Positions 14,672 through 25,400 are shown, counted from the first letter of the stretch. The stretch: DNA of 64,000 nt from Malacoraja senta (GCA_038087875.1 CM075985.1:16430001-16494000), one strand, 5' to 3'. The notes: generated from the sequence alone by a model not told the origin. A program made the numbers and translations.

Positions 14672-16371
14672 ACTTACACATCATGAAATACTGAATCGCT
14701 CTTGCAGACGTTTTACAGCGTACCTCTGTTTTTGAATAAAAATAGATGACCCAAACAACCAAAACGTTGCAGTGATTTTTGCTGCCATCTTTTTTTTTTA
14801 CTGATGCAGTTTAAATTATTTTGTCATTTAAATTATTTACTTTAGGAAAATTCTCCCTCCCTATAGCCCCGGACAGCTGATGTTGACAGAGCAATTATTA
14901 TATTTCAGAATAAATACTTTGGAGTAATGATTTTACATTGAAATAAAGAACTTGTATCCTCTCAGTAAATGCTCTGCACCGTCAAGCTGAAGCGTGAAAT
15001 GGAAATCCTTAATATTAGCCCAAAGCTCTATTCAACTTGAAGGCACACCTTTTTGGGTTTTGTTGTCTTTACAATGTGTAGGGTTGTTATCAGCAGCATG
15101 ATTTGTAGGTAAATACAATGATTATCTGACTCTGATATGAAATCCCAAATTGCAGCTCATAATCTTTAATTTCCCCATAGAATCAAATGGCTTTCAAATT
15201 TCAGCTTAATCTATTTTGCAATAAATTCAAATTTCATTTGCTGCATTCCAAACAATTTGGGAATTTTCCTGTACATCAATTAAGTGACTGACACAACTCT
15301 TATTTCTCATGTTACAGATATTCCTCAGAAGTAGATTGTCATAATCCAGCCTTCAAATTAATACTAGCCATTCAAAAATATATAATCTAAATTTTGTAAT
15401 GGCTTTTAGTATCATTCCCAATCTTTCAGCCTGTTCACTGCACTTTGAGAGAGGTATGTTTGACAATATTCAGTTGCTTTAAGTGAAACAGTTATATCAC
15501 ATCATATTATCTAAATTCCACATCAACAACATTTCACTCACTCAATCGCCCTTGCACATTAACTATACTCCAATATTGAAACAAAAAGAGAAAATAGTAG
15601 CAGCATCTCATGCAAAAAAAGCATCAGTGTCCAAACTCAATTGCCACAATGACAGCTTTTTCATTCACAAGCCTTAGCACTATTTCTTATGTGGGGTACA
15701 ACAATCATTAAGCATTTGCTTCAGCAAACATGAAGGGCGTCAGGCATTGAATTATGGCTTAATGGGAGGAAAGAGGAGGGTAACAGGCATCCTTTGGTAA
15801 CAGAACAGCAAATGATAACATAATGGTATATAAAGCCACGGAATAATCAGTGGCCTTTGGTGCTTGAAATGGTTGCAATTACTCCTTCGTAATGTTTAAG
15901 TTTTCCAATGTATATTACCATTAGGGCAGGTGGCCATGCTTACATGTTACCTGCCCATTTAAATGGTGTTAAAATTAGTTACAGGCAGCCAATGTAAGCC
16001 ATGAACTAAAAATATCCTTCATCCTAATTCAAGTCAGCTAAACAAAAAAATGAACCTGATGATAATTAAATCTAGATTTTTTAAAATCATTTGTTTCTTT
16101 TGTATAAATGCATTAACGTTCCCATAGGTTGCCTGGCAGGTTTCAGTACTGACAATCCAATTTGCTACCATTGTATGACCGTTAAATTTATTTTAAACTC
16201 GTCAATGGAGCACCTTAACCATTTTTCATATGGAGAGTCAACAATGAATCTTTCACACAGTGATACACCAGGATATGAATATGGTCAGTCTTCTACTGCC
16301 TGGGGACAAAAGTTTCCAAGGCTACAGAGTGGTGGATCTAGAAAGCTGAGATGGATGTCCGTTCTCTGCGG

Positions 16372-16488
16372 TCATGATGGATAAGGCCTGGCACTACTTA
16401 GCAGCCAGAGCAGAACAAGCTGGATTCCTATCATTGACCATAAGGATGGGCTCAGACTAGAGCTCCCGCCACACTCAGTGTCATCCTC
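16372..16488 (-). CDS. CACNA2D1: CACNA2D1 canonical terminal exon, coding part ([38 protein letters not shown]), GPI-signal-type C-terminus
   Basis: ctaac...tttctccccttggcaacag|GAGGAT; stop TGA at 16374-16372; matches human EDYTDCGGVSGLNPSLWYIIGIQFLLLWL. Confidence 0.95.
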   Translation of the reverse strand, partial: EDDTECGGSSSLSPSLWSMIGIQLVLLWLLSSARPYPS

Positions 16489-19400
16489 CTGTTGCCAAGG
16501 GGAGAAACATAAAGTTAGTGACCACATCGCATCCTGTACCAGCAGTTCTCAATTGATCTCTTAAGCTAAGGCAGCATTTAAGCACATTTATTTTTGCAGT
16601 CTTAATACCATTTGCATTGCTTCAATTATGGAGATACACGGAACTGCAGATGTTGCTTTACAAAAGAAGACAAAGCAAGTAACTAGGCAAGTCAGGCAGC
16701 ACCTCAGGAGAACATGGATAGGCCATAGATGTTTCGGGTCTGGACATGGATAGACTACAGAACATGGATAGTTGATGTTTTGGAGAAACAAAGAACTGCA
16801 GAAGCTGGTTTATACCAAAGATAGACTCAATGTTCTGGAGTAACTCAGTAGGTTAGCCAATATCTCTGGAGGGAAAGGAATAGGTGACGTTTCAGGCCGA
16901 GTCCTTTCTCTCTCTACTTCTTCGAAAAAGGGTCCAGATCTAAAATGTCACCTATCCTTTTCCCCAGAGTTGCTGCCTGAGTTACTCCAGTACTTTAAAT
17001 CAATCTTCAGTCGACGTTTTGGGTCTGGTCCCTTCTTCAAACTCTGAAGAAGGATCCCGACCCATTATGTCACCCATCCATGTCCTCTTGATTTGCTCCC
17101 TGACCCGCTGAGTTTCACCAACATTCCATATCTTCTTCTGCTTCAATTATGGGGCCTTTTTTTAAAAACACATTTGTGAGTCCTACTCTGAGATTCGGTA
17201 TTGAAGGAATTGTGAAATGAATAACATTTCTTTGGTTCAATTGGTGTACAACTCAAGCTCAGGAAAATAAAATCAAGCTATCAGCACCGAACATGTCCGA
17301 AATATCTTCAACCAATTGCCTGAATGTTTAGCACTGGCAACTAATGAAGATTTTGCCCATTAATCTACAATATTAAATGTATTTAAAACATAGAACTGAA
17401 GATACTCACTTTTTGCCTTTAAGACACAATTGAATATCCTTTTAATTCCATCTGACTGCCACAAGACAGGTCTGGATTATTAGAGCACACTTGTGGAGAT
17501 ACAGGACCTAGAACTTTCTATTCCTATTCCATGGCGCTAACTCATTCAAGCACACACACCAAAGACCAACTGCAACAAGGACTTCATGTCACCAGTGTTC
17601 AACATCAAAGCAGCCCTTACAGGTAACAGTTCCATCTCATCTCGGCTGTGACTAAAGTTCCTACACTGTCTGAGATATTAAAGTATTTCACCCTGCAAGC
17701 AGTTATACAAACAGACCCTTGCCACTCCCTTCTCAAACTGGTGTTCATACTCAAGAAATAGGCAATGCACTAACAGCGTTTTTTAGACTCTCACAACATA
17801 AGTTTTAGTTCAATTAAATTATATAGGGAGACTTTGAAAGGAAGCAGATTGCCATTTTTCTGGTGCACAGAACAAGGCGAACTACAATGTTTCTCATATT
17901 TTATAGCATCCCACACTCCTTAAGCATGAGTAATTTCCTTTGAAGTACACAGACTGCTTTAGGTGGGGTATGACCCGAGCATTAAACAGAGGCTTCTTTC
18001 TCTCTCTTGTGGATGACACCCTACACCACAGCACAGGAACCCAGATTTGTGAACAAAATTAAATGTTCTGAGAAAAAGAGAAAAACTGGGAAATGCAGAG
18101 AAAGAACAAAACTATCTTTTGTTTTGTTTTCCTGTTCCAAGCTAACCATGTGAAGCCCAGCTGCCAACAAAAAAAGCATGGAAATGGGAATAAAATGATG
18201 CTGATGTATTGGATCTTCGCTTAATATTTGTGGTAGTGGTGCGTCTGGCTACAGCCTTAATCAGAAAACTGCAATGTATTAAGTAACTTGGCCTGCCATG
18301 ATGTAGGTGGCCCAGTGAAGTGATGTTAATGGCAGGACTTCAGGTGAATGCCAGGTTATTCCAGTAAAGATGGTGATGCACATTCTAATGGGAAAAATAC
18401 ACAGAACTTGAAGAAGTCTGAATTAGTTTGCAGTGTTGGTTTTTCTTGGGGGAAGGGGCGGGGATGGCACTTATTCCAAATCTGATTATTTCTCTGTGCT
18501 TGTTTATAATCAGTAATTTATAATTAGTGTGGAAGAAAGTCAGGAGACTCCCTCCTCACAACCCACGGTGTTGACTCTGTAACTAGGCCTGGCAATGCCC
18601 ATAAACTTGAAAGGAGCAGGGAAATGGCTCAGAGCAAAGGATACGATGCTCAACTAAAGGTAAACTTAGACCTAGTGTCAGGAAGTTCTTCACTCCAAGA
18701 ATGATCTACAGTTGAAATGAGGCGATTAAATTATTTCAGGAATAATTCGATTCTGAATGGGTAAATTAAAACAAGCTAAGGAACCTTCCTCCTATGTAAG
18801 AAGAACTATTTTGAAGTTTTAACAATAGTCATACTATTGGAAAGTATTTATGTTGAAATAAGTCAAATCAATGCTATAGTTTTATTGTCACTTCTTCATT
18901 ATTTGGATCTTTAATAAAATTGTGACTCTTTCTTTCTTAGCTTTGTAACACATGTTCCAACTTATTGACTCCCAATGTCTTCCAAAAGTTCACAGCAAAG
19001 AACTGTCAACGTTTCTGATTTGCATTTGCATCACAATTCCAATCCTCAATACTATTTTTAAGGCTAGGTGTATACAGAGCGAATTGAACTATATAATTTT
19101 ACAGGATATGGCTAGAATGAGATCCTCATTCCAGATGGTTAAATTAACTATTCTAACTTTGTCACTTCACACCACCTGTGATATTAACTAAGATTTTCTC
19201 TCTGCATTAGCCTCCATGCCTGACCTTGTTGGGAATGTCCCATAGCCCTGCTACGTACAACACATTTAGGCTTCATTGATTGTATAATCAACCCTCTGAC
19301 TGCCTCCATGAACCCCACAGCCACTCTATCAAAGGTGTTCCCTTTCTCTTTTATCTACCATCCTCTTCTCCATCATCACCCAGAAAATGGAGAACAGGAA

Positions 19401-22400
19401 GAGCTTGAAAAGGGAAGGGTATTAACTTGTAAGGGGAACTTGGGAGATTCATGGCCACATTCAATCAAACTTACTAAACTAAAAAAACACAGCAAGCTAG
19501 TCTTTTGAAAAATCATGCTGACTATGAACCATCAAAAACCATAAATTGACATAAAAAATACTTTCCAACACTACAATATGTATTTTTGCTTTTAGAAATA
19601 ATATTTGGAAAATAAGTTGAGATGATGCAGATAATGTTGAAAAGTCGTTTTTTATGTCAATTTATGATTTTTGATGGTTATAGTCCATCAAAAATCTGCA
19701 TCATCTAAACTTATTTTCCAAATAATATTTCTTAAAGCAAAAATATATATTGTAGCGTTGAAAAGTAGTTTATGTCGATTTATGATTTAAGAATACTTAA
19801 ATGTGGTTAATATTTGCTATAATTATCTTTTATCTATTGAGATAAAAACTTTGAACAATTATTTTTTGCCAGTGAAACTAAATTCAAATATATCATTAAA
19901 GAATACAGAAACAATGCACAAACAATTACTGAGTTCTGAGAAGCATTGAAAATTGATAGCTCAACAAACAATTACTGTAGTTCAGAAAAGAAACTTAATT
20001 TTAAAAACTAATATGAAATATCAAACCACTCTAAGTTCGCTCTGGACCACAATTATTTGTAGGATGTTAGTTTCATGTTAATATCACACCTAAGAAGGAA
20101 ACTACAGAACAAAATCCAGTGAAAGTAACTGACCCTCCGCACCACATCAAAACTTGCAGTAAAATGAAGAGAGGAGCTGACGCCACGGCAGGGGCACGAC
20201 TTGTTGTGCATATAGGCTCATCCTATTAACAACGGGCAAAGTAGCAAGAAGGAAAAAAAGGGAACACAAAAAAAAAGACATAACAAAATGAGTTCATGCA
20301 TTTTTTGCTGCTGGCAGAGATAATGTGGGCGTCCACCTAGAGCAGAAAGTCACAGTGTAAATCACAAAACAGAAAATACCCCACTATTAACAAATTAAAA
20401 AACACACACAGTCACACGTCAATCAGCAAAGACATCAAGCTTGTGAGCAACAGTGTTACTGTACTTTCACGCATCGAATTTATGGGGAGCTATTTTTGTC
20501 ATCAGGAAAGATGAGGAATGTTCAGATCTTTCAGCTAGTTGTAGGTGAAGTTCATGCATTGATGCACAATGTGGATTTTTGTTTTCAGTGACTCAATCCC
20601 CAAGCACAGTGGCGCAGTGGTAGAGTCACTGCCTTACAGTGCCTGAGACCCAGGTTCAATTCTGAATATGGGTGCTGTCTGTACGGAGTTTGTATATTCT
20701 CCCTGTGACCATATGGGATTTCTCTGGGAGCTCCGGTTTAATCCCACATCCCAAAGACGTGTAGGTCTGCACATTTTATCTCTGTTTGCTTTGTTGTTAC
20801 CTTCTCTTAGCTAACAATGATCTATTCTACATTTTAATTGATCTACATCCGCTTTGCCTCATTTTCACACTTTACACTTCCTTATCTCGGTATTTTCCTC
20901 TCCCCTGACTCAGTCTGAAAAAAGGTCTCGAGACGAAACCCATTCCTTCTATCCAGAGATGCTGCCCGTCCTGCTGAGTTACTCTAGCATTTTGTGTCTA
21001 TCTTCAGGCCTGTAGGTTAGGTCTGTAGCTATTGGCTAAATTGTCCCTAGTATGTTGGATAGAACTGGTGTATGCGTGATTGCTGATTGGCGCAGACTTG
21101 GTGGACCTGTTTCAATGCTGTGTTTCTAAACACGTGATGACAGCAATATTCTGTCTAATTGGATTATCGAACTTCATTGCTTCATCATCAGGCAAATGGA
21201 TCTCATTCAGGATCTGCAGCAATGAAGTGTTCATTTTGCATGTCAGGATACATAGAAACAGAGAAAATAGGTGCAGGAGTAGGCCATTCGGCCCTTTGAG
21301 CCTGCACCGCCATTCAATATGATCATGGCTGATCATCCAACTCAGTATCCTGTACCTGCTTTCTCACCATACCCCCTGATCCCTTTAGCCACAAGGGCCA
21401 CATCTAACTCCCTCTTAAATATAGCCAATAAACTGGCCTCAACTACCTTCTGTGGCAGAGAATTCCAGAGATTCACCACTCTCTGTGTGAAAAATGTTTT
21501 CCTCATCTCGGTCCTAAAAGATTTCCCCCTTATCCTTAAACTGTGACCCCTTGTTCTGGACTTCCCCAACATCGGGAACAATCTTCCTGCATCTAGCCTG
21601 TCCAACCCCTTAAGAATTTTGTACGTTTCTATAAGATCCCCCCTCAATCTTCTAAATTCTAGCGAGTACAAACCGAGTCTATCCAGTCTTTCTTCATATG
21701 AAAGTCCTGACATCCCAGGAATCAGTCTGGTGAACCTTCTCCCTCTATGGCAAGAATGTCTTTCCTCAGATTAGGAGACCAAAACTGTACGCAATACTCG
21801 TCTCACCAAGACCCTGTACAACTGCAGTAGAACCTCCCTGCTCCTATACTCAAATCCTTTTGCTATGAATGCTAACATACCATTCGCCTTCTTCACTGCC
21901 TGCTGCACCTGCATGCCTACTTTTAATGACTGGTGTACCATGACACCCGGGTCTCGTTGCATCTCCCCTTTTCCTAATCGGCCACCATTCAGATAATAGT
22001 CTACTTTCCTGTTTTTGCCACCAAAGTGGATAACCTCACATTTATCCACATTATACTGCATCTGCCATGCATTTGCCCACTCACCCAGCCTATCCAAGTC
22101 ACCTTGCAGCCTCCGAGCACCCTCCTCACAGCTAACACTGCCCCCCAGCTTTGTGTCATCCGCAAACTTGGAGATGTTGCATTCAATTCCCTCGTCCAAA
22201 TCATTAATATATATCATAAATAGCTGGGGTCCCAGCACTGAGCTTTGCGGTACCCCACTAGTCACTGCCTGCCATTGTGAAAAGGACCCGTTTACTCCTA
22301 CTCTTTGCTTCCTGTCTGCCAGCCAGTTCTCTATCCACATCAATACTGAACCTCCAATACCGTGTGCTTTAAGTTTGTATACTAATCTCTTATGTGGGAC

Positions 22401-25400
22401 CTTGTCGAAAGCCTTCTGAAAGTCCAGATATAACACATCCACTGGTTCTCCCTTATCCACTCTACTAGTTACATCCTTGAAAAATTCTATAAGATTCGTC
22501 AGACATGATTTACCTTTCATAAATCCATGCTGACTTTGTCCAATGATTTCACCACTTTCCAAATGTGCTGCTATCCCATCTTTAATAACTGATTCTAGCA
22601 GTTTCCCCACTACCGACGTTAGACTAACTGGTCTGTAATTCCCCATTTTCTCTCTCCCTCTCTTTTTAAAAAGTGGGGTTACATTAGCTACCCTCCAATC
22701 CTCAGGAACTACTCCAGAATCTAAAGAGTTTTGAAAAATCATCACTAATGCATCCACTATTTCTGGGGCTACTTCCTTAAGTACTCTGGGATGCAGCCTA
22801 TCTGGCCCTGGGGATTTATCGGCCTTTAATCCATTCAATTTACCTAACACCACTTCCCGGCTAACCTGGATTTCACTCAGCTCCTCCATCTCATTTGACC
22901 CCCGGTCCCCTGCTATTTCCGGCAGGTTATTTATGTCTTCCTTAGTGAAGACAGAACCAAAGTAGTTATTCAATTGGTCTGCCATGTCCTTGTTCCCCAT
23001 GATCAATTCACCTGTTTCTGACTGCAAGGGACCTACATTTGTTTTAACTAATCTTTTTCTCTTCACATATCTATAAAAGCTTTTGCAGTCAGTTTTTATG
23101 TTCCCTGCCAGTTTTCTTTCATCATCTATTTTCCCTTTCCTAGCTACCAGCTACTTTCAACTCAAACAAAGAATTCCTCAGTCGTATGAGTAAAAGCCAC
23201 GGCAGAGGCATTGTAAAAGGTGAAAAGTCAGAACAAAAGTGAAATACAGTAACTTCTACACGTGAGCAGAAAGGGTTTCATCTTCGACAGTGCTCCATTA
23301 TCACAATCGAACGGATGCCTAGATTTTTCTGTTCCCAGATTTGGATGGGATTGCAACTTAGGATACTTGAGGATGCTTCCTGCTATAACACAGCTGGCAC
23401 AAGGAAGTGCTCAAAGTTCATATGGAGTCATAGATAAAAAGTAGTAAAGTCAAACAGTGCGGAAACAGACTCTTTGGCCTAACTTGTCCATGCCGACTAA
23501 GATGTCCCATCTACGCCAGTCCCATTTAAAGTCATGGAGACATTGAGTCAATGGAAGTAGAGGGAAATTTACAAAAATGATTCTTCACACTGAGGGTATT
23601 TAGGATGACAAATTCTCTTTACAATGCTTTGTGCATCTGTCAATATATATATATTTTCTCAGAGAAATCAAGCAGATTTCCTTTGCTTGTTATCCAACAT
23701 AGCCAGTACCCACAGAGCCTCTACCTTACACACTGACTGACTTCCTTAAATGGAATTCAGTACAGAAATAGACCGATTTGTTATTTGATTGGCCTTCTTT
23801 TGTTGGAGAGTCTTATGATATTACAGAGACGATTTGTACAGGAGGAATTAAACTCCAAGCACTGGGGACAAAGTCGAGTCACAATTTACCTGATTTTTTT
23901 GCCTGAAAGTAGAGTATTCAGAGAAAGGATATCGAAAGCTGCAGTTAATTTAATGTTAACATTCCGAAAGAGTTATGATATGTAATCAAAATAAAAAAAC
24001 TATGGTCCAGAGCAATGACACATTTGTGCAAGGTTGCTATCTGGACACATCCTTGCCAGATGCTACTTTCAAAAAGTAGCCAACAGCAATACTCCCTGAT
24101 GTCCATTCACTTTCCTCGTTTCTCTTTGAATCCAAACTTTGCATACTTACACGCTCATCAGAATCAAAGCATGCTTCGGGACCTTTCCTATGTCTGGGAT
24201 TCTTAGCTAAAAAACAAGGATCTGGTCCATCAGCTGTAAAGTCTGATTAAGGAAGAAACACAACACCAAAAAAACAAAAACACATTCCATTGTTGAAACA
24301 AAGCACTGCAGATGCTGGTTTACCAAAGAAGGCACAAAAGGCTGGTAACTCAGCGGGTCATGCAACATCTCTGGAGAACATGTATTAGTATGAAGAAGGG
24401 TCCCAACCTGAAATATCACTGATCCATGTTCTCCAGAGATGCTGCCTAACCCGCTGAGTTACTCCAGCACTTTGCATCTTTGCATTCCATTGTTGCTCAT
24501 TTTAATTTTCCAGGTTAAAATAATTTTGTCCGTTGTGAACTAATAGTGTGGATATTTTGGCATTATTTGGGGAGGGACTGCATGCTGAAAGGTTAAAGGG
24601 AAATTGGTCAAATTTGCAGGGTTGCCAGTATTTTATTTTATTTTTTTATTTTTTTATTTTTAAAAATATTTTATTTATTAGAAGTAAGTACATTACATTT
24701 TGATTGTACCTTTTTACAGGTTCCTAGAATTATTAAAACATTTTATGTACAACTTCCTTTTTTTTTTTTTGCAAAGAAATGAGAAAGAAAGAAGTAGTGA
24801 AGAGTAAAGAAAAGTCTAGTGAGTGTGAAGTAAAGAAAATAAATAAGTAAGAAAGTGAAGCAGAAAGGAGATTCTCCCTCGCCACAAGTCGATGCTTTTT
24901 TATATTCTTAATCATTTTTCGCCCAAACCCCTATTTTTTTTAATTTTACAATACTATTGCACCACATGAATCCACAAGGTCAATAAATGGAGACCAACTC
25001 GTTAAGAATTGGTCTTGTTTATCTATTAGGAGGAGTATCATTTCTTCCAAGTGGGCAGTTTCCAACATATTACCAATCCACATTTTGAGTGTTGGTATAG
25101 TAGCATTTTTCCAAAATTTAAGTATGAGTTTTTTTGCTGTTATTAAACCATAATTTAAAAATGAAATTTGGGATATATTTAATCTGTTTCCATCTCCTAC
25201 TACTCCGAAGATAATCATTTCCATATTAGGTTCCATTTTTATCTTAAATAAACTAGTAAATATATCAAATATATCATACCAAAATCCATGAAGTTTTGTG
25301 CAAGAAACGAAAGAATGTGTGATATTGGCATTTTGAGAAAGACATTTATCACAGATGGGAGAAATATTTGAATAAAATTTATTCAACCTAACTTTTGAAT

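What the first reader, a model, noticed from the sequence alone, without database searches (positions are those of the whole stretch)
20073..20222. Hidden second terminal exon that would swap the membrane anchor of alpha2delta-1
Seen: inside the last intron, a very strong acceptor (tgtc-(t)n-gtgttccc-(t)n-ccttcttgctactttgcccgttgttaatag|G) opens a 49-codon frame in exactly the phase (0) left by the penultimate exon. The product would be ...CFDSDER|[49 protein letters not shown]. It parallels the canonical exon (EDDTECGG...LW..IQLVLLW): acidic start, Cys at position 5 versus 6, small-residue spacer and hydrophobic tail. It is longer, with two hydrophobic segments separated by WCGGS. It is not in the ORF track and not repeat-derived. 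Established: the canonical last exon supplies the GPI-attachment signal and the delta-chain Cys reported to form a disulfide with the alpha2 VWA region. Inference: mutually exclusive last exons give two alpha2delta-1 isoforms with different anchors (a different GPI signal or a true transmembrane form) and different 3' UTRs, keeping the linking Cys. I do not know of this being described for mammalian CACNA2D1.
Basis: partly seen in the sequence, partly recalled or inferred. Interest (0 to 1): 0.9.

Follow-up and report, generated by a model that had tools for sequence, protein, structure and literature searches.

The report
Frame-shifting cassette exon in skate CACNA2D1
The "hidden exon" in the last intron of this skate's calcium-channel alpha2delta-1 gene is really spliced into RNA in related skates, but as an 89-base internal exon joined on to the normal last exon, whose shifted reading frame would replace the protein's membrane-anchor signal with a different hydrophobic tail.

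Summary
An AG acceptor at 20224-20223 opens a 49-codon frame at 20222 (- strand), in phase with the penultimate CACNA2D1 exon, which ends at 24151.

RNA assemblies from four related organisms (four separate studies) show the site is used, but not as a terminal exon. In two runs a single contig joins the penultimate exon to 20222, and joins 20134 (donor AGG|gtcagt) to the canonical last exon at 16488.

- **What it is:** an 89-nt cassette exon, 20134-20222.
- **Frame shift:** 89 is not a multiple of 3, so the last exon is read in the +1 frame.
- **Predicted tail:[30 protein letters not shown] + [11 protein letters not shown], 41 aa in place of the canonical 38-aa GPI signal.
- **Stop codon:** it lies in the last exon, so no nonsense-mediated decay is expected, and the 3'UTR is shared.
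its last 19 residues are intronic in every junction-spanning contig.
- **Coexistence:** one contig is exactly the 147-nt bubble arm expected if the inclusion and skipping forms coexist.
- **Relatives:** they show no stops or frameshifts, and one has an in-frame 3-nt deletion.

Sequence features alone are not beyond chance. Conservation outside skates, tissue pattern, translation and anchor type are untested. The papers I could search describe no C-terminal cassette in alpha2delta-1.

The parts
24151..24242 (-). Penultimate coding exon of CACNA2D1 (..[30 protein letters not shown]), ends in phase 0 with donor CGT|gtaagt
   Evidence: Matches rabbit alpha2delta-1 residues 1040-1066. The loose ends of X2 and X3 behind 20222 equal its last bases.
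20223..20285 (-). Pyrimidine-rich tract and AG acceptor (AG = 20224-20223) of the cassette exon
   Evidence: The X2 and X3 contigs end their match exactly at 20222 and continue into the penultimate exon.
20134..20222 (-). 89-nt cassette exon encoding [29 protein letters not shown](G); length mod 3 = 2, so the last exon is read in the +1 frame
   Evidence: X2 (147-nt contig) and X3 (397-nt contig) cover 20133-20222 with 0 mismatches and are flanked by penultimate-exon and last-exon sequence. Searches give coordinates and translation. One search shows the contig length equals the expected bubble arm.
20128..20133 (-). 5' splice site of the cassette (AGG|gtcagt)
   Evidence: the loose ends before 20133 (X2, X3) and before 20143 (X1) are the start of the canonical last exon. 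Base 20133 (G) is ambiguous between intron and last exon.
20073..20133 (-).
   Evidence: No contig combines the 20222 acceptor with read-through of the donor.
20223..20336 (-). 5' extension from an upstream alternative acceptor (ctctag|GTGGAC, AG = 20338-20337), used in organism D. In-frame stops TAA TAG lie at 20228-20223.
   Evidence: X4 record 25 (1656 nt) lies on 20019-20304 and 24149-24233. The 34 letters between correspond to 20305-20336 with a net +2. Translation.
16372..16488 (-). Coding part of the canonical last exon (EDDTECGG...ARPYPS*, stop at 16374-16372); supplies the GPI-signal tail in the skipping form
   Evidence: Matches rabbit alpha2delta-1 residues 1069-1102.
16452..16454 (-). 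Stop codon (TGA) of the inclusion form, in the +1 frame of the last exon, 35-37 nt after the junction

Best explanation
The feature is an alternatively spliced 89-nt cassette exon (20134-20222, - strand) between the penultimate and last coding exons of skate CACNA2D1 (alpha2delta-1).

**Shown**
- In related skates the exon is spliced at its AG acceptor to the penultimate exon, and at a GT donor to the normal last exon.
- Both the inclusion and the skipping forms occur in at least one sample.

**Follows from the sequence**
- 89 is not a multiple of three, so inclusion shifts the last exon into its +1 frame.
- The 38-residue canonical tail (the CGG omega-site region plus the hydrophobic GPI signal) is replaced by a 41-residue tail: [30 protein letters not shown] + [11 protein letters not shown].
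- The new stop lies in the last exon, so the mRNA should escape nonsense-mediated decay and keep the same 3'UTR.

**Inferred**
- The new tail has an acidic start, a Cys at position 5, a run of small residues (TTS, APAVASA) and then a hydrophobic core of about 13-19 residues followed by Arg.
- It would therefore act as an alternative C-terminal anchor signal. That could be a GPI signal with a different omega site (for example near Ser8/Ala10) or a short type-I transmembrane segment with an 11-residue cytoplasmic stub.
- The result would be an alpha2delta-1 isoform with a different membrane attachment.
For: **Junctions**
- X2 (organism B) and X3 (organism C) contigs match 20133-20222 with 0 mismatches.
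- Their loose ends are ACGCTCATCA..., the end of the penultimate exon, and ...CACTCAGTGTCATCCT, the start of the last exon at 16488 (verified).
- X1 (organism A) also uses the donor. Its loose end translates as its own EDDSECGG last exon.

**Coexistence**
- the X2 contig length (147) and flanks (28 and 30) equal exactly the inclusion arm of a k=31 graph bubble. So inclusion and skipping coexist in that sample.
- The X3 contig runs 297 nt into the last exon without a break.

**Product**
- translation and stop position.

**Relatives**
- Their peptides are open: P11S in D, and A14V plus an in-frame loss of Trp27 in A. The exon is 86 nt in A, which gives the same frame shift.

**Conservation hints**
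- D versus the window: 2/89 differences in the cassette and 12/286 in cassette plus flanks, against 9/85 in the penultimate exon.
- A versus the window: 10/331 around the cassette, against 13/175 in another part of the intron.

**Independence and gene identity**
- The four runs come from four different studies and organisms.
- Gene identity.
Against: - No RNA run of the window's own species was available, so inclusion there is inferred from identical exon sequence in B and C.
- Run kinds are only guessed ('RNA?'), and tissues are unknown.
- Contig depth is a poor measure of usage. In X1 the cassette contig (10.5) is small beside the penultimate exon (bin mean 110), and that contig is unspliced upstream. 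So inclusion may be minor or partly reflect unfinished processing.
- All four organisms are close relatives. Two synonymous and two non-synonymous changes cannot show purifying selection.
- Sequence features alone are within chance.
- No protein or transcript fragment carrying the exon was found in the protein collections. These searches were poorly suited to the task.
- Translation, GPI or transmembrane behaviour and function are untested. The hydrophobic core is short and is followed by an Arg, which is atypical for a GPI signal.
Confidence: 0.7

Rival explanations
1. Non-functional splicing noise. This would be a young cryptic exon that the spliceosome includes at a low level in skates. It would look conserved only because the sampled species diverged recently, and its open hydrophobic frame would be a by-product of T-rich sequence.
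For: -: 1.5% of random segments give an equally hydrophobic open product, and 24 other AG..GT candidates exist in this intron.
- in X1 the cassette contig is about 5% of penultimate-exon depth and is unspliced upstream.
- X4 uses a different acceptor and ignores the donor, which suggests sloppy processing here.
- No homologue was found outside these runs.
Against: - Both junctions occur in single contigs in two organisms from different studies.
- X2 depth is 5.5, against roughly 7-9 for the penultimate exon.
- The X3 contig passes into the last exon without the branch that a dominant skipping form would create.
- The cassette and its flanks are less diverged than the neighbouring intron and exon.
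- The only indel inside the exon is 3 nt and in frame, while the flanks carry 1-, 1-, 1- and 5-nt indels.
- The stop falls in the last exon, so the product is not simply degraded.
Confidence: 0.22
2. This is an alternative terminal exon with its own 3'UTR, encoding the full 49-residue tail ending ...[19 protein letters not shown], mutually exclusive with the canonical last exon.
For: -: the X4 contig (organism D) is joined to the penultimate exon and reads through the donor for at least 338 nt, colinear with the genome. So an unspliced or terminal-like form of this region exists.
- It is the only contig covering the penultimate exon in that run.
Against: - That contig uses the upstream acceptor at 20336, not 20222.
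- From 20336 the frame stops before DEPICTT, at TAA TAG in the window species. In D, which carries a net +2 indel, it stops after VDAHINSASSQQNA.
- No contig combines the 20222 acceptor with donor read-through.
- Three organisms splice the donor to the last exon.
- No poly(A) signal lies within about 1.2 kb downstream.
Confidence: 0.04
3. A regulatory switch that makes anchorless alpha2delta-1. Use of this intronic region, above all through the upstream acceptor at 20336, would serve mainly to terminate the reading frame before any functional anchor signal. The product would be secreted or loosely attached.
For: - In D the upstream-acceptor form predicts a 14-residue hydrophilic tail and then a stop (my reconstruction).
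- It is the only assembled path through the penultimate exon in X4.
- An engineered alpha2delta lacking the C-terminal GPI motif is mainly secreted yet partly functional (Kadurin 2012, as summarised in PMC5043047).
Against: - The ORF after 20336 is not conserved between D and the window species, which reads [36 protein letters not shown].
- It rests on a single contig in one run.
- If the donor is later spliced, the stop lies more than 55 nt upstream of a junction and the mRNA would be an NMD target.
Confidence: 0.04

Closest known systems
Alternative splicing regions A, B and C of alpha2delta-1 (Angelotti & Hofmann 1996; Lana et al. 2014, PMC3988960; summarised in PMC5043047)
   Same: Same gene. 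Cassette exons or alternative acceptors give tissue-specific isoforms (skeletal muscle, brain, DRG).
   Different: A, B and C lie in the alpha2 part and are in-frame insertions. The exon here lies in delta, between the last two coding exons, shifts the frame and replaces the anchor signal. The reviews I read (PMC5043047, PMC7351808) describe no such event.
GPI-versus-other-anchor switching by alternative 3' exons: NCAM-120 versus NCAM-140/180, and acetylcholinesterase H (GPI) versus T forms, first worked out in Torpedo (my own knowledge, not checked here)
   Same: Alternative splicing near the 3' end swaps the C-terminal hydrophobic signal and so changes how an extracellular protein is attached to the membrane.
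   Different: Those cases use alternative exons that each carry their own tail in frame. Here a frame-shifting cassette re-reads the common last exon. Neither anchor type has been tested for the new tail.
Frame-shifting C-terminal splice events in calcium-channel alpha1 subunits, e.g. exon 47 variants giving long or short C-termini (CaV2.2: PMC10666670; CaV2.1 from my own knowledge)
   Same: A small splice change near the last exon shifts the frame and changes the C-terminal peptide without triggering NMD.
   Different: Those change cytoplasmic tails of pore subunits. This one changes the lumenal or membrane anchor signal of the auxiliary subunit.
Engineered alpha2delta-1 lacking the C-terminal GPI motif (Kadurin et al. 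2012, cited in PMC5043047)
   Same: It shows that the last ~30-40 residues decide membrane attachment, and that changing them alters secretion and surface association.
   Different: It is an artificial truncation. The natural isoform here keeps a hydrophobic tail.

Membership tests
CACNA2D1 (alpha2delta-1) gene, 3' end | Flanking exons are homologous to the C-terminal delta region of alpha2delta-1 rather than to other paralogues | tested here: met
   only alpha2delta-1 chains are hit (E 2.5e-09 and 4.8e-08), at rabbit residues 1040-1066 and 1069-1102.
Cassette (skipped) exon | Acceptor and donor are both used in the same RNA molecule, joining the upstream and downstream constitutive exons | tested here: met
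   the X2 and X3 contigs carry both junctions. Verified against the window.
Cassette (skipped) exon | A skipping form coexists | tested here: met
   Indirect. The X2 contig is exactly the 147-nt inclusion arm expected at k=31 if a skipping path exists. The skipping product is the canonical protein. The skip junction itself was not displayed.
Alternative last (terminal) exon | No downstream 5' splice site is used; the transcript ends at its own poly(A) site | tested here: not met
   The donor at 20134|20133 is used in organisms A, B and C. The nearest AATAAA or ATTAAA is about 1.2 kb downstream. Only X4 reads through, and it does so from another acceptor.
Poison (NMD-inducing) exon | A premature stop lies more than ~50-55 nt upstream of the last exon-exon junction | tested here: not met
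   the cassette frame is open, and the stop (16454-16452) lies inside the last exon.
GPI-anchor attachment signal | Small residues at omega and omega+2, a polar spacer of ~5-10 residues, and a C-terminal hydrophobic stretch of ~15-20 residues | tested here: inconclusive
   By inspection and hydropathy only. Candidate omega sites are S8/A10, the spacer is PAVASAP, and the hydrophobic core [10 protein letters not shown] has a maximum KD11 of 2.43, against 2.49 for the canonical tail. The core is short and is followed by CGGR and 10 more residues. No GPI or TM predictor was available.
Conserved coding exon | Open frame, splice sites and length class are kept across distant species, with dN/dS < 1 | tested here: inconclusive
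   Kept in four close relatives: no stops, one in-frame 3-nt deletion, and 2 synonymous plus 2 non-synonymous changes. No genomes outside this group could be searched with the tools.

The most novel reading that the evidence does not exclude
Skates, and possibly a wider range of cartilaginous fishes or vertebrates, make a second natural alpha2delta-1 isoform in which a frame-shifting cassette swaps the GPI-anchor signal for a different anchor. That anchor could be a true single-pass transmembrane segment with a short cytoplasmic stub, or a GPI signal with another omega site. The isoform would be dominant in some tissues, and would change the channel subunit's raft targeting, mobility or release from the membrane.
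Probability: 0.3. Interest if true: 0.65.

Novelty: new member of a known kind. Interest (0 to 1): 0.45.

Why it matters
How alpha2delta subunits are held in the membrane, by GPI anchor or by transmembrane segment, has been debated since 2010. It bears on lipid-raft targeting, trafficking of CaV1 and CaV2 channels, shedding, and the non-channel synaptic roles of these gabapentinoid targets.

All described alpha2delta-1 splice variation (regions A, B, C) lies in alpha2. A natural isoform that exchanges only the anchor signal would be a ready-made experiment on what the anchor contributes. It would also prompt a look for an equivalent exon in the last intron of other vertebrates' CACNA2D genes.

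If it is confined to skates or is low-level noise, it is a small annotation point.

Tried and rejected
1. **Terminal-exon model.** Rejected by the donor junctions and by the lack of a nearby poly(A) signal.
2. **Exhaustive HMMER search of 1.84 billion representative proteins with the 49-aa ORF.** The only hit, P0001, is a translated tandem repeat with 8 weak stretches, so it is spurious. Isoforms differing only at the C-terminus would in any case be collapsed at 50% clustering.
3. **The search for homologous proteins with the 49-aa ORF, and with the penultimate exon via a stop-free reference, region 1-40.** Neither returned candidates. The length window (0.55-1.75x) prevents reaching full-length annotated isoforms, and no long stop-free reference containing the exon exists.
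4. **Exon duplication.** The cassette is not significantly similar to the last exon at DNA or protein level (shuffle p about 0.06), and nothing else in the window resembles it.
5. **Repeat origin.** Rejected. It is single-copy, with only low-depth contigs, unlike the adjacent LINE.
6. **Structured RNA.** No Rfam family in 15000-25000.
7. **Earlier notes of the scan.** Nothing at this place. A words look-up gave only the organism type.
8. **Literature searches for a C-terminal CACNA2D1 cassette, and for the cryo-EM cysteine numbering.** Nothing relevant was found.
9. **Acceptor strength by local pyrimidine content.** Unremarkable, so 'very strong acceptor' is not a quantitative argument.

Full report
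**1. Observation**

The - strand around 20222 reads ...tgtc(t)9gtgttccc(t)7ccttcttgctactttgcccgttgttaatag|GATGAGCCT....

The penultimate exon ends ...GAT GAG CGT|gtaagt at 24151 on a full codon. The canonical last exon begins at 16488 and encodes [38 protein letters not shown]. Both flanking exons hit only alpha2delta-1 chains among solved structures, at rabbit residues 1040-1066 and 1069-1102. An earlier follow-up on the same genome calls the organism a skate.

Sequence alone is not compelling:
- 21% of random 89-nt segments of this intron are open, and 1.5% are open and as hydrophobic.
- 24 other AG...GT candidates would give a similar product.
- The acceptor's local pyrimidine content is ordinary.

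**2. Transcript evidence**

Two searches for sequencing runs returned three groups:
- the probable source DNA (organism H);
- DNA of close relatives;
- RNA-type assemblies from other organisms. Two of these (X2, organism B; X3, organism C) hold both the canonical 3'UTR and a short piece of the candidate region.

Laying four RNA runs on 19400-24400 was swamped by a high-copy repeat. It still showed one 1656-nt contig of X4 (organism D) lying on both 20019-20304 and the penultimate exon.

A second lay on the repeat-free stretch 19700-20520 was decisive:
- **X2 and X3.** X2 (147-nt contig) and X3 (397-nt contig) match exactly 20133-20222 without a mismatch. Beyond 20222 they continue ATGCTCATCAGAATCAAAGCATACTTCG and ACGCTCATCA. 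That is the + strand of the penultimate exon's end, with two substitutions in B. Before 20133 both continue ...GAGCTCCCGCCACACTCAGTGTCATCCT, which is identical to the + strand of the start of the canonical last exon at 16488.
- **Boundaries.** Base 20133 (G) fits both the intron's GT and the last exon's first G. So the exon is 20134-20222, 89 nt, with donor AGG|gtcagt.
- **X1 (organism A).** It uses the same donor, and its loose end reads as its own last exon (EDDSECGG). It is unspliced upstream as far as 20473 and beyond.

**3. Both forms coexist**

Assume a k=31 assembly graph. This k is my assumption about how the Logan contigs were built, not something a tool stated. The inclusion-specific arm of a skip/include bubble should then carry:
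- 30 minus 2 = 28 nt of the penultimate exon, because the cassette and the last exon share their first two bases;
- 30 nt of the last exon.

The total is 147 nt. The X2 contig is exactly that: 28 + 89 + 30 = 147. This is indirect but specific evidence that inclusion and skipping transcripts are both present in that sample.

Contig depths are of the same order in X2: 5.5 for the cassette arm against roughly 7-9 on the penultimate exon. In X1 the cassette is much lower, 10.5 against a bin mean of 110. Such depths are a poor measure.

**4. Consequence for the protein**

The skipping form gives ...CFDSDER|EDDTECGG...ARPYPS*. The inclusion form gives ...CFDSDER|[30 protein letters not shown]|[11 protein letters not shown]. 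Its stop is at 16454-16452, inside the last exon.

- No nonsense-mediated decay is expected, and the 3'UTR is shared.
- The 38-residue canonical tail holds the CGG region and the hydrophobic stretch taken to be the GPI signal (PMC5043047). A 41-residue tail replaces it, with an acidic start, Cys5, small residues and a hydrophobic core. The maximum 11-residue hydropathy is 2.43, against 2.49 for the canonical tail.
- Whether the new tail is a GPI signal or a short transmembrane helix followed by Arg and ten residues could not be computed here.

**5. Conservation**

| Organism | Changes in the cassette |
|---|---|
| B and C | Identical to the window |
| D | One synonymous change and P11S |
| A | One synonymous change, A14V and an in-frame 3-nt deletion (loss of Trp27) |

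The deletion in A makes its exon 86 nt, which gives the same frame shift. No copy has a stop or a frameshift. The flanks carry 1-nt and 5-nt indels.

In D the cassette (2/89) and its flanks (12/286) are less diverged than the penultimate exon (9/85). In A the cassette region (10/331) is less diverged than another intron piece (13/175). This suggests constraint but is far from proof, because all four organisms are close relatives.

**6. A second acceptor**

The X4 contig is joined to the penultimate exon through an upstream acceptor (ctctag|GTGGAC, exon start 20336). The 34 letters between its two matches correspond to 20305-20336 with a net +2. The contig then reads through the donor for at least 338 nt.

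- From 20336 the frame in the window species gives [36 protein letters not shown] and stops at TAA TAG just before DEPICTT.
- In D my reconstruction gives VDAHINSASSQQNA and a stop. That ORF is therefore not conserved.
- This form is either an unfinished processing intermediate or an anchorless variant.
No contig combines the 20222 acceptor with donor read-through, and no poly(A) signal lies within about 1.2 kb.

**7. Comparison with what is known**

Reviews and the primary paper on alpha2delta-1 splicing describe only regions A, B and C in alpha2 (PMC5043047, PMC3988960, PMC7351808). Searches for a C-terminal cassette found nothing.

As a mechanism it belongs to a known kind, in which alternative splicing near the 3' end swaps a C-terminal anchor signal. 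NCAM and the acetylcholinesterase H/T forms are examples from my own knowledge. The frame-shifting device is like the exon-47 events of CaV2 channels (PMC10666670). I therefore file it as a new member of a known kind.

It may already be present in automatic gene models of skate genomes, which I could not inspect.

By my numbering inference, that cysteine is in the penultimate exon. I did not verify this.

**8. Limits**

- No RNA of the window's own species was available.
- Run types are guessed and tissues are unknown.
- Only contigs, not reads, were examined.
- Protein searches could not reach full-length isoforms.

**9. Verdict**

The exon is real and spliced in related skates. It is a frame-shifting cassette rather than a terminal exon. 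The functional reading, an alternative anchor, is plausible but untested.

- Interest: 0.45.
- Confidence in the best explanation as worded: 0.7. The splicing part is about 0.9. The claim of a functional alternative-anchor protein is about 0.35-0.45.

Noticed in passing
window 21342-23066 (- strand); high depth over 20569-23240: A 5'-truncated LINE fills much of the intron between the penultimate exon and the cassette. It carries a 431-aa reverse-transcriptase ORF (Pfam RVT_1, E 7.6e-32) on the same strand as the gene. It is extremely high-copy and abundant in the RNA assemblies of all four relatives.
   Followed up: partly
window 20336 (acceptor AG 20338-20337), - strand: An upstream alternative acceptor is used in organism D (X4, 1656-nt contig), which then reads through the cassette's donor. 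The ORF from this acceptor is not conserved between D and the window species. In D it would end the protein without any hydrophobic tail.
   Followed up: partly
window 20295-20299, - strand: A GCATG (Rbfox-type) motif lies about 73 nt upstream of the cassette acceptor. A pyrimidine tract with UCUU-type elements lies between them. No differences are listed at the motif in the contigs of organisms A and D. This may bear on tissue regulation, but it was not tested.
   Followed up: no
window 24151-24242 (penultimate exon): The 3' part of this coding exon varies unusually among relatives. There are two non-synonymous changes in 28 nt in organism B (A>V, R>H) and 9/85 differences in organism D. That is more than in the cassette region.
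   Followed up: no
window 54920-55105, 55376-55521, 59351-59759: Three runs of N (assembly gaps or masked stretches).
   Followed up: no
P0001: The only hit of the exhaustive protein search is a 559-aa translation of a ~62-residue tandem repeat. It scores through 8 weak stretches against the hydrophobic ORF. It illustrates how repeats inflate phmmer scores for short hydrophobic queries.
   Followed up: yes
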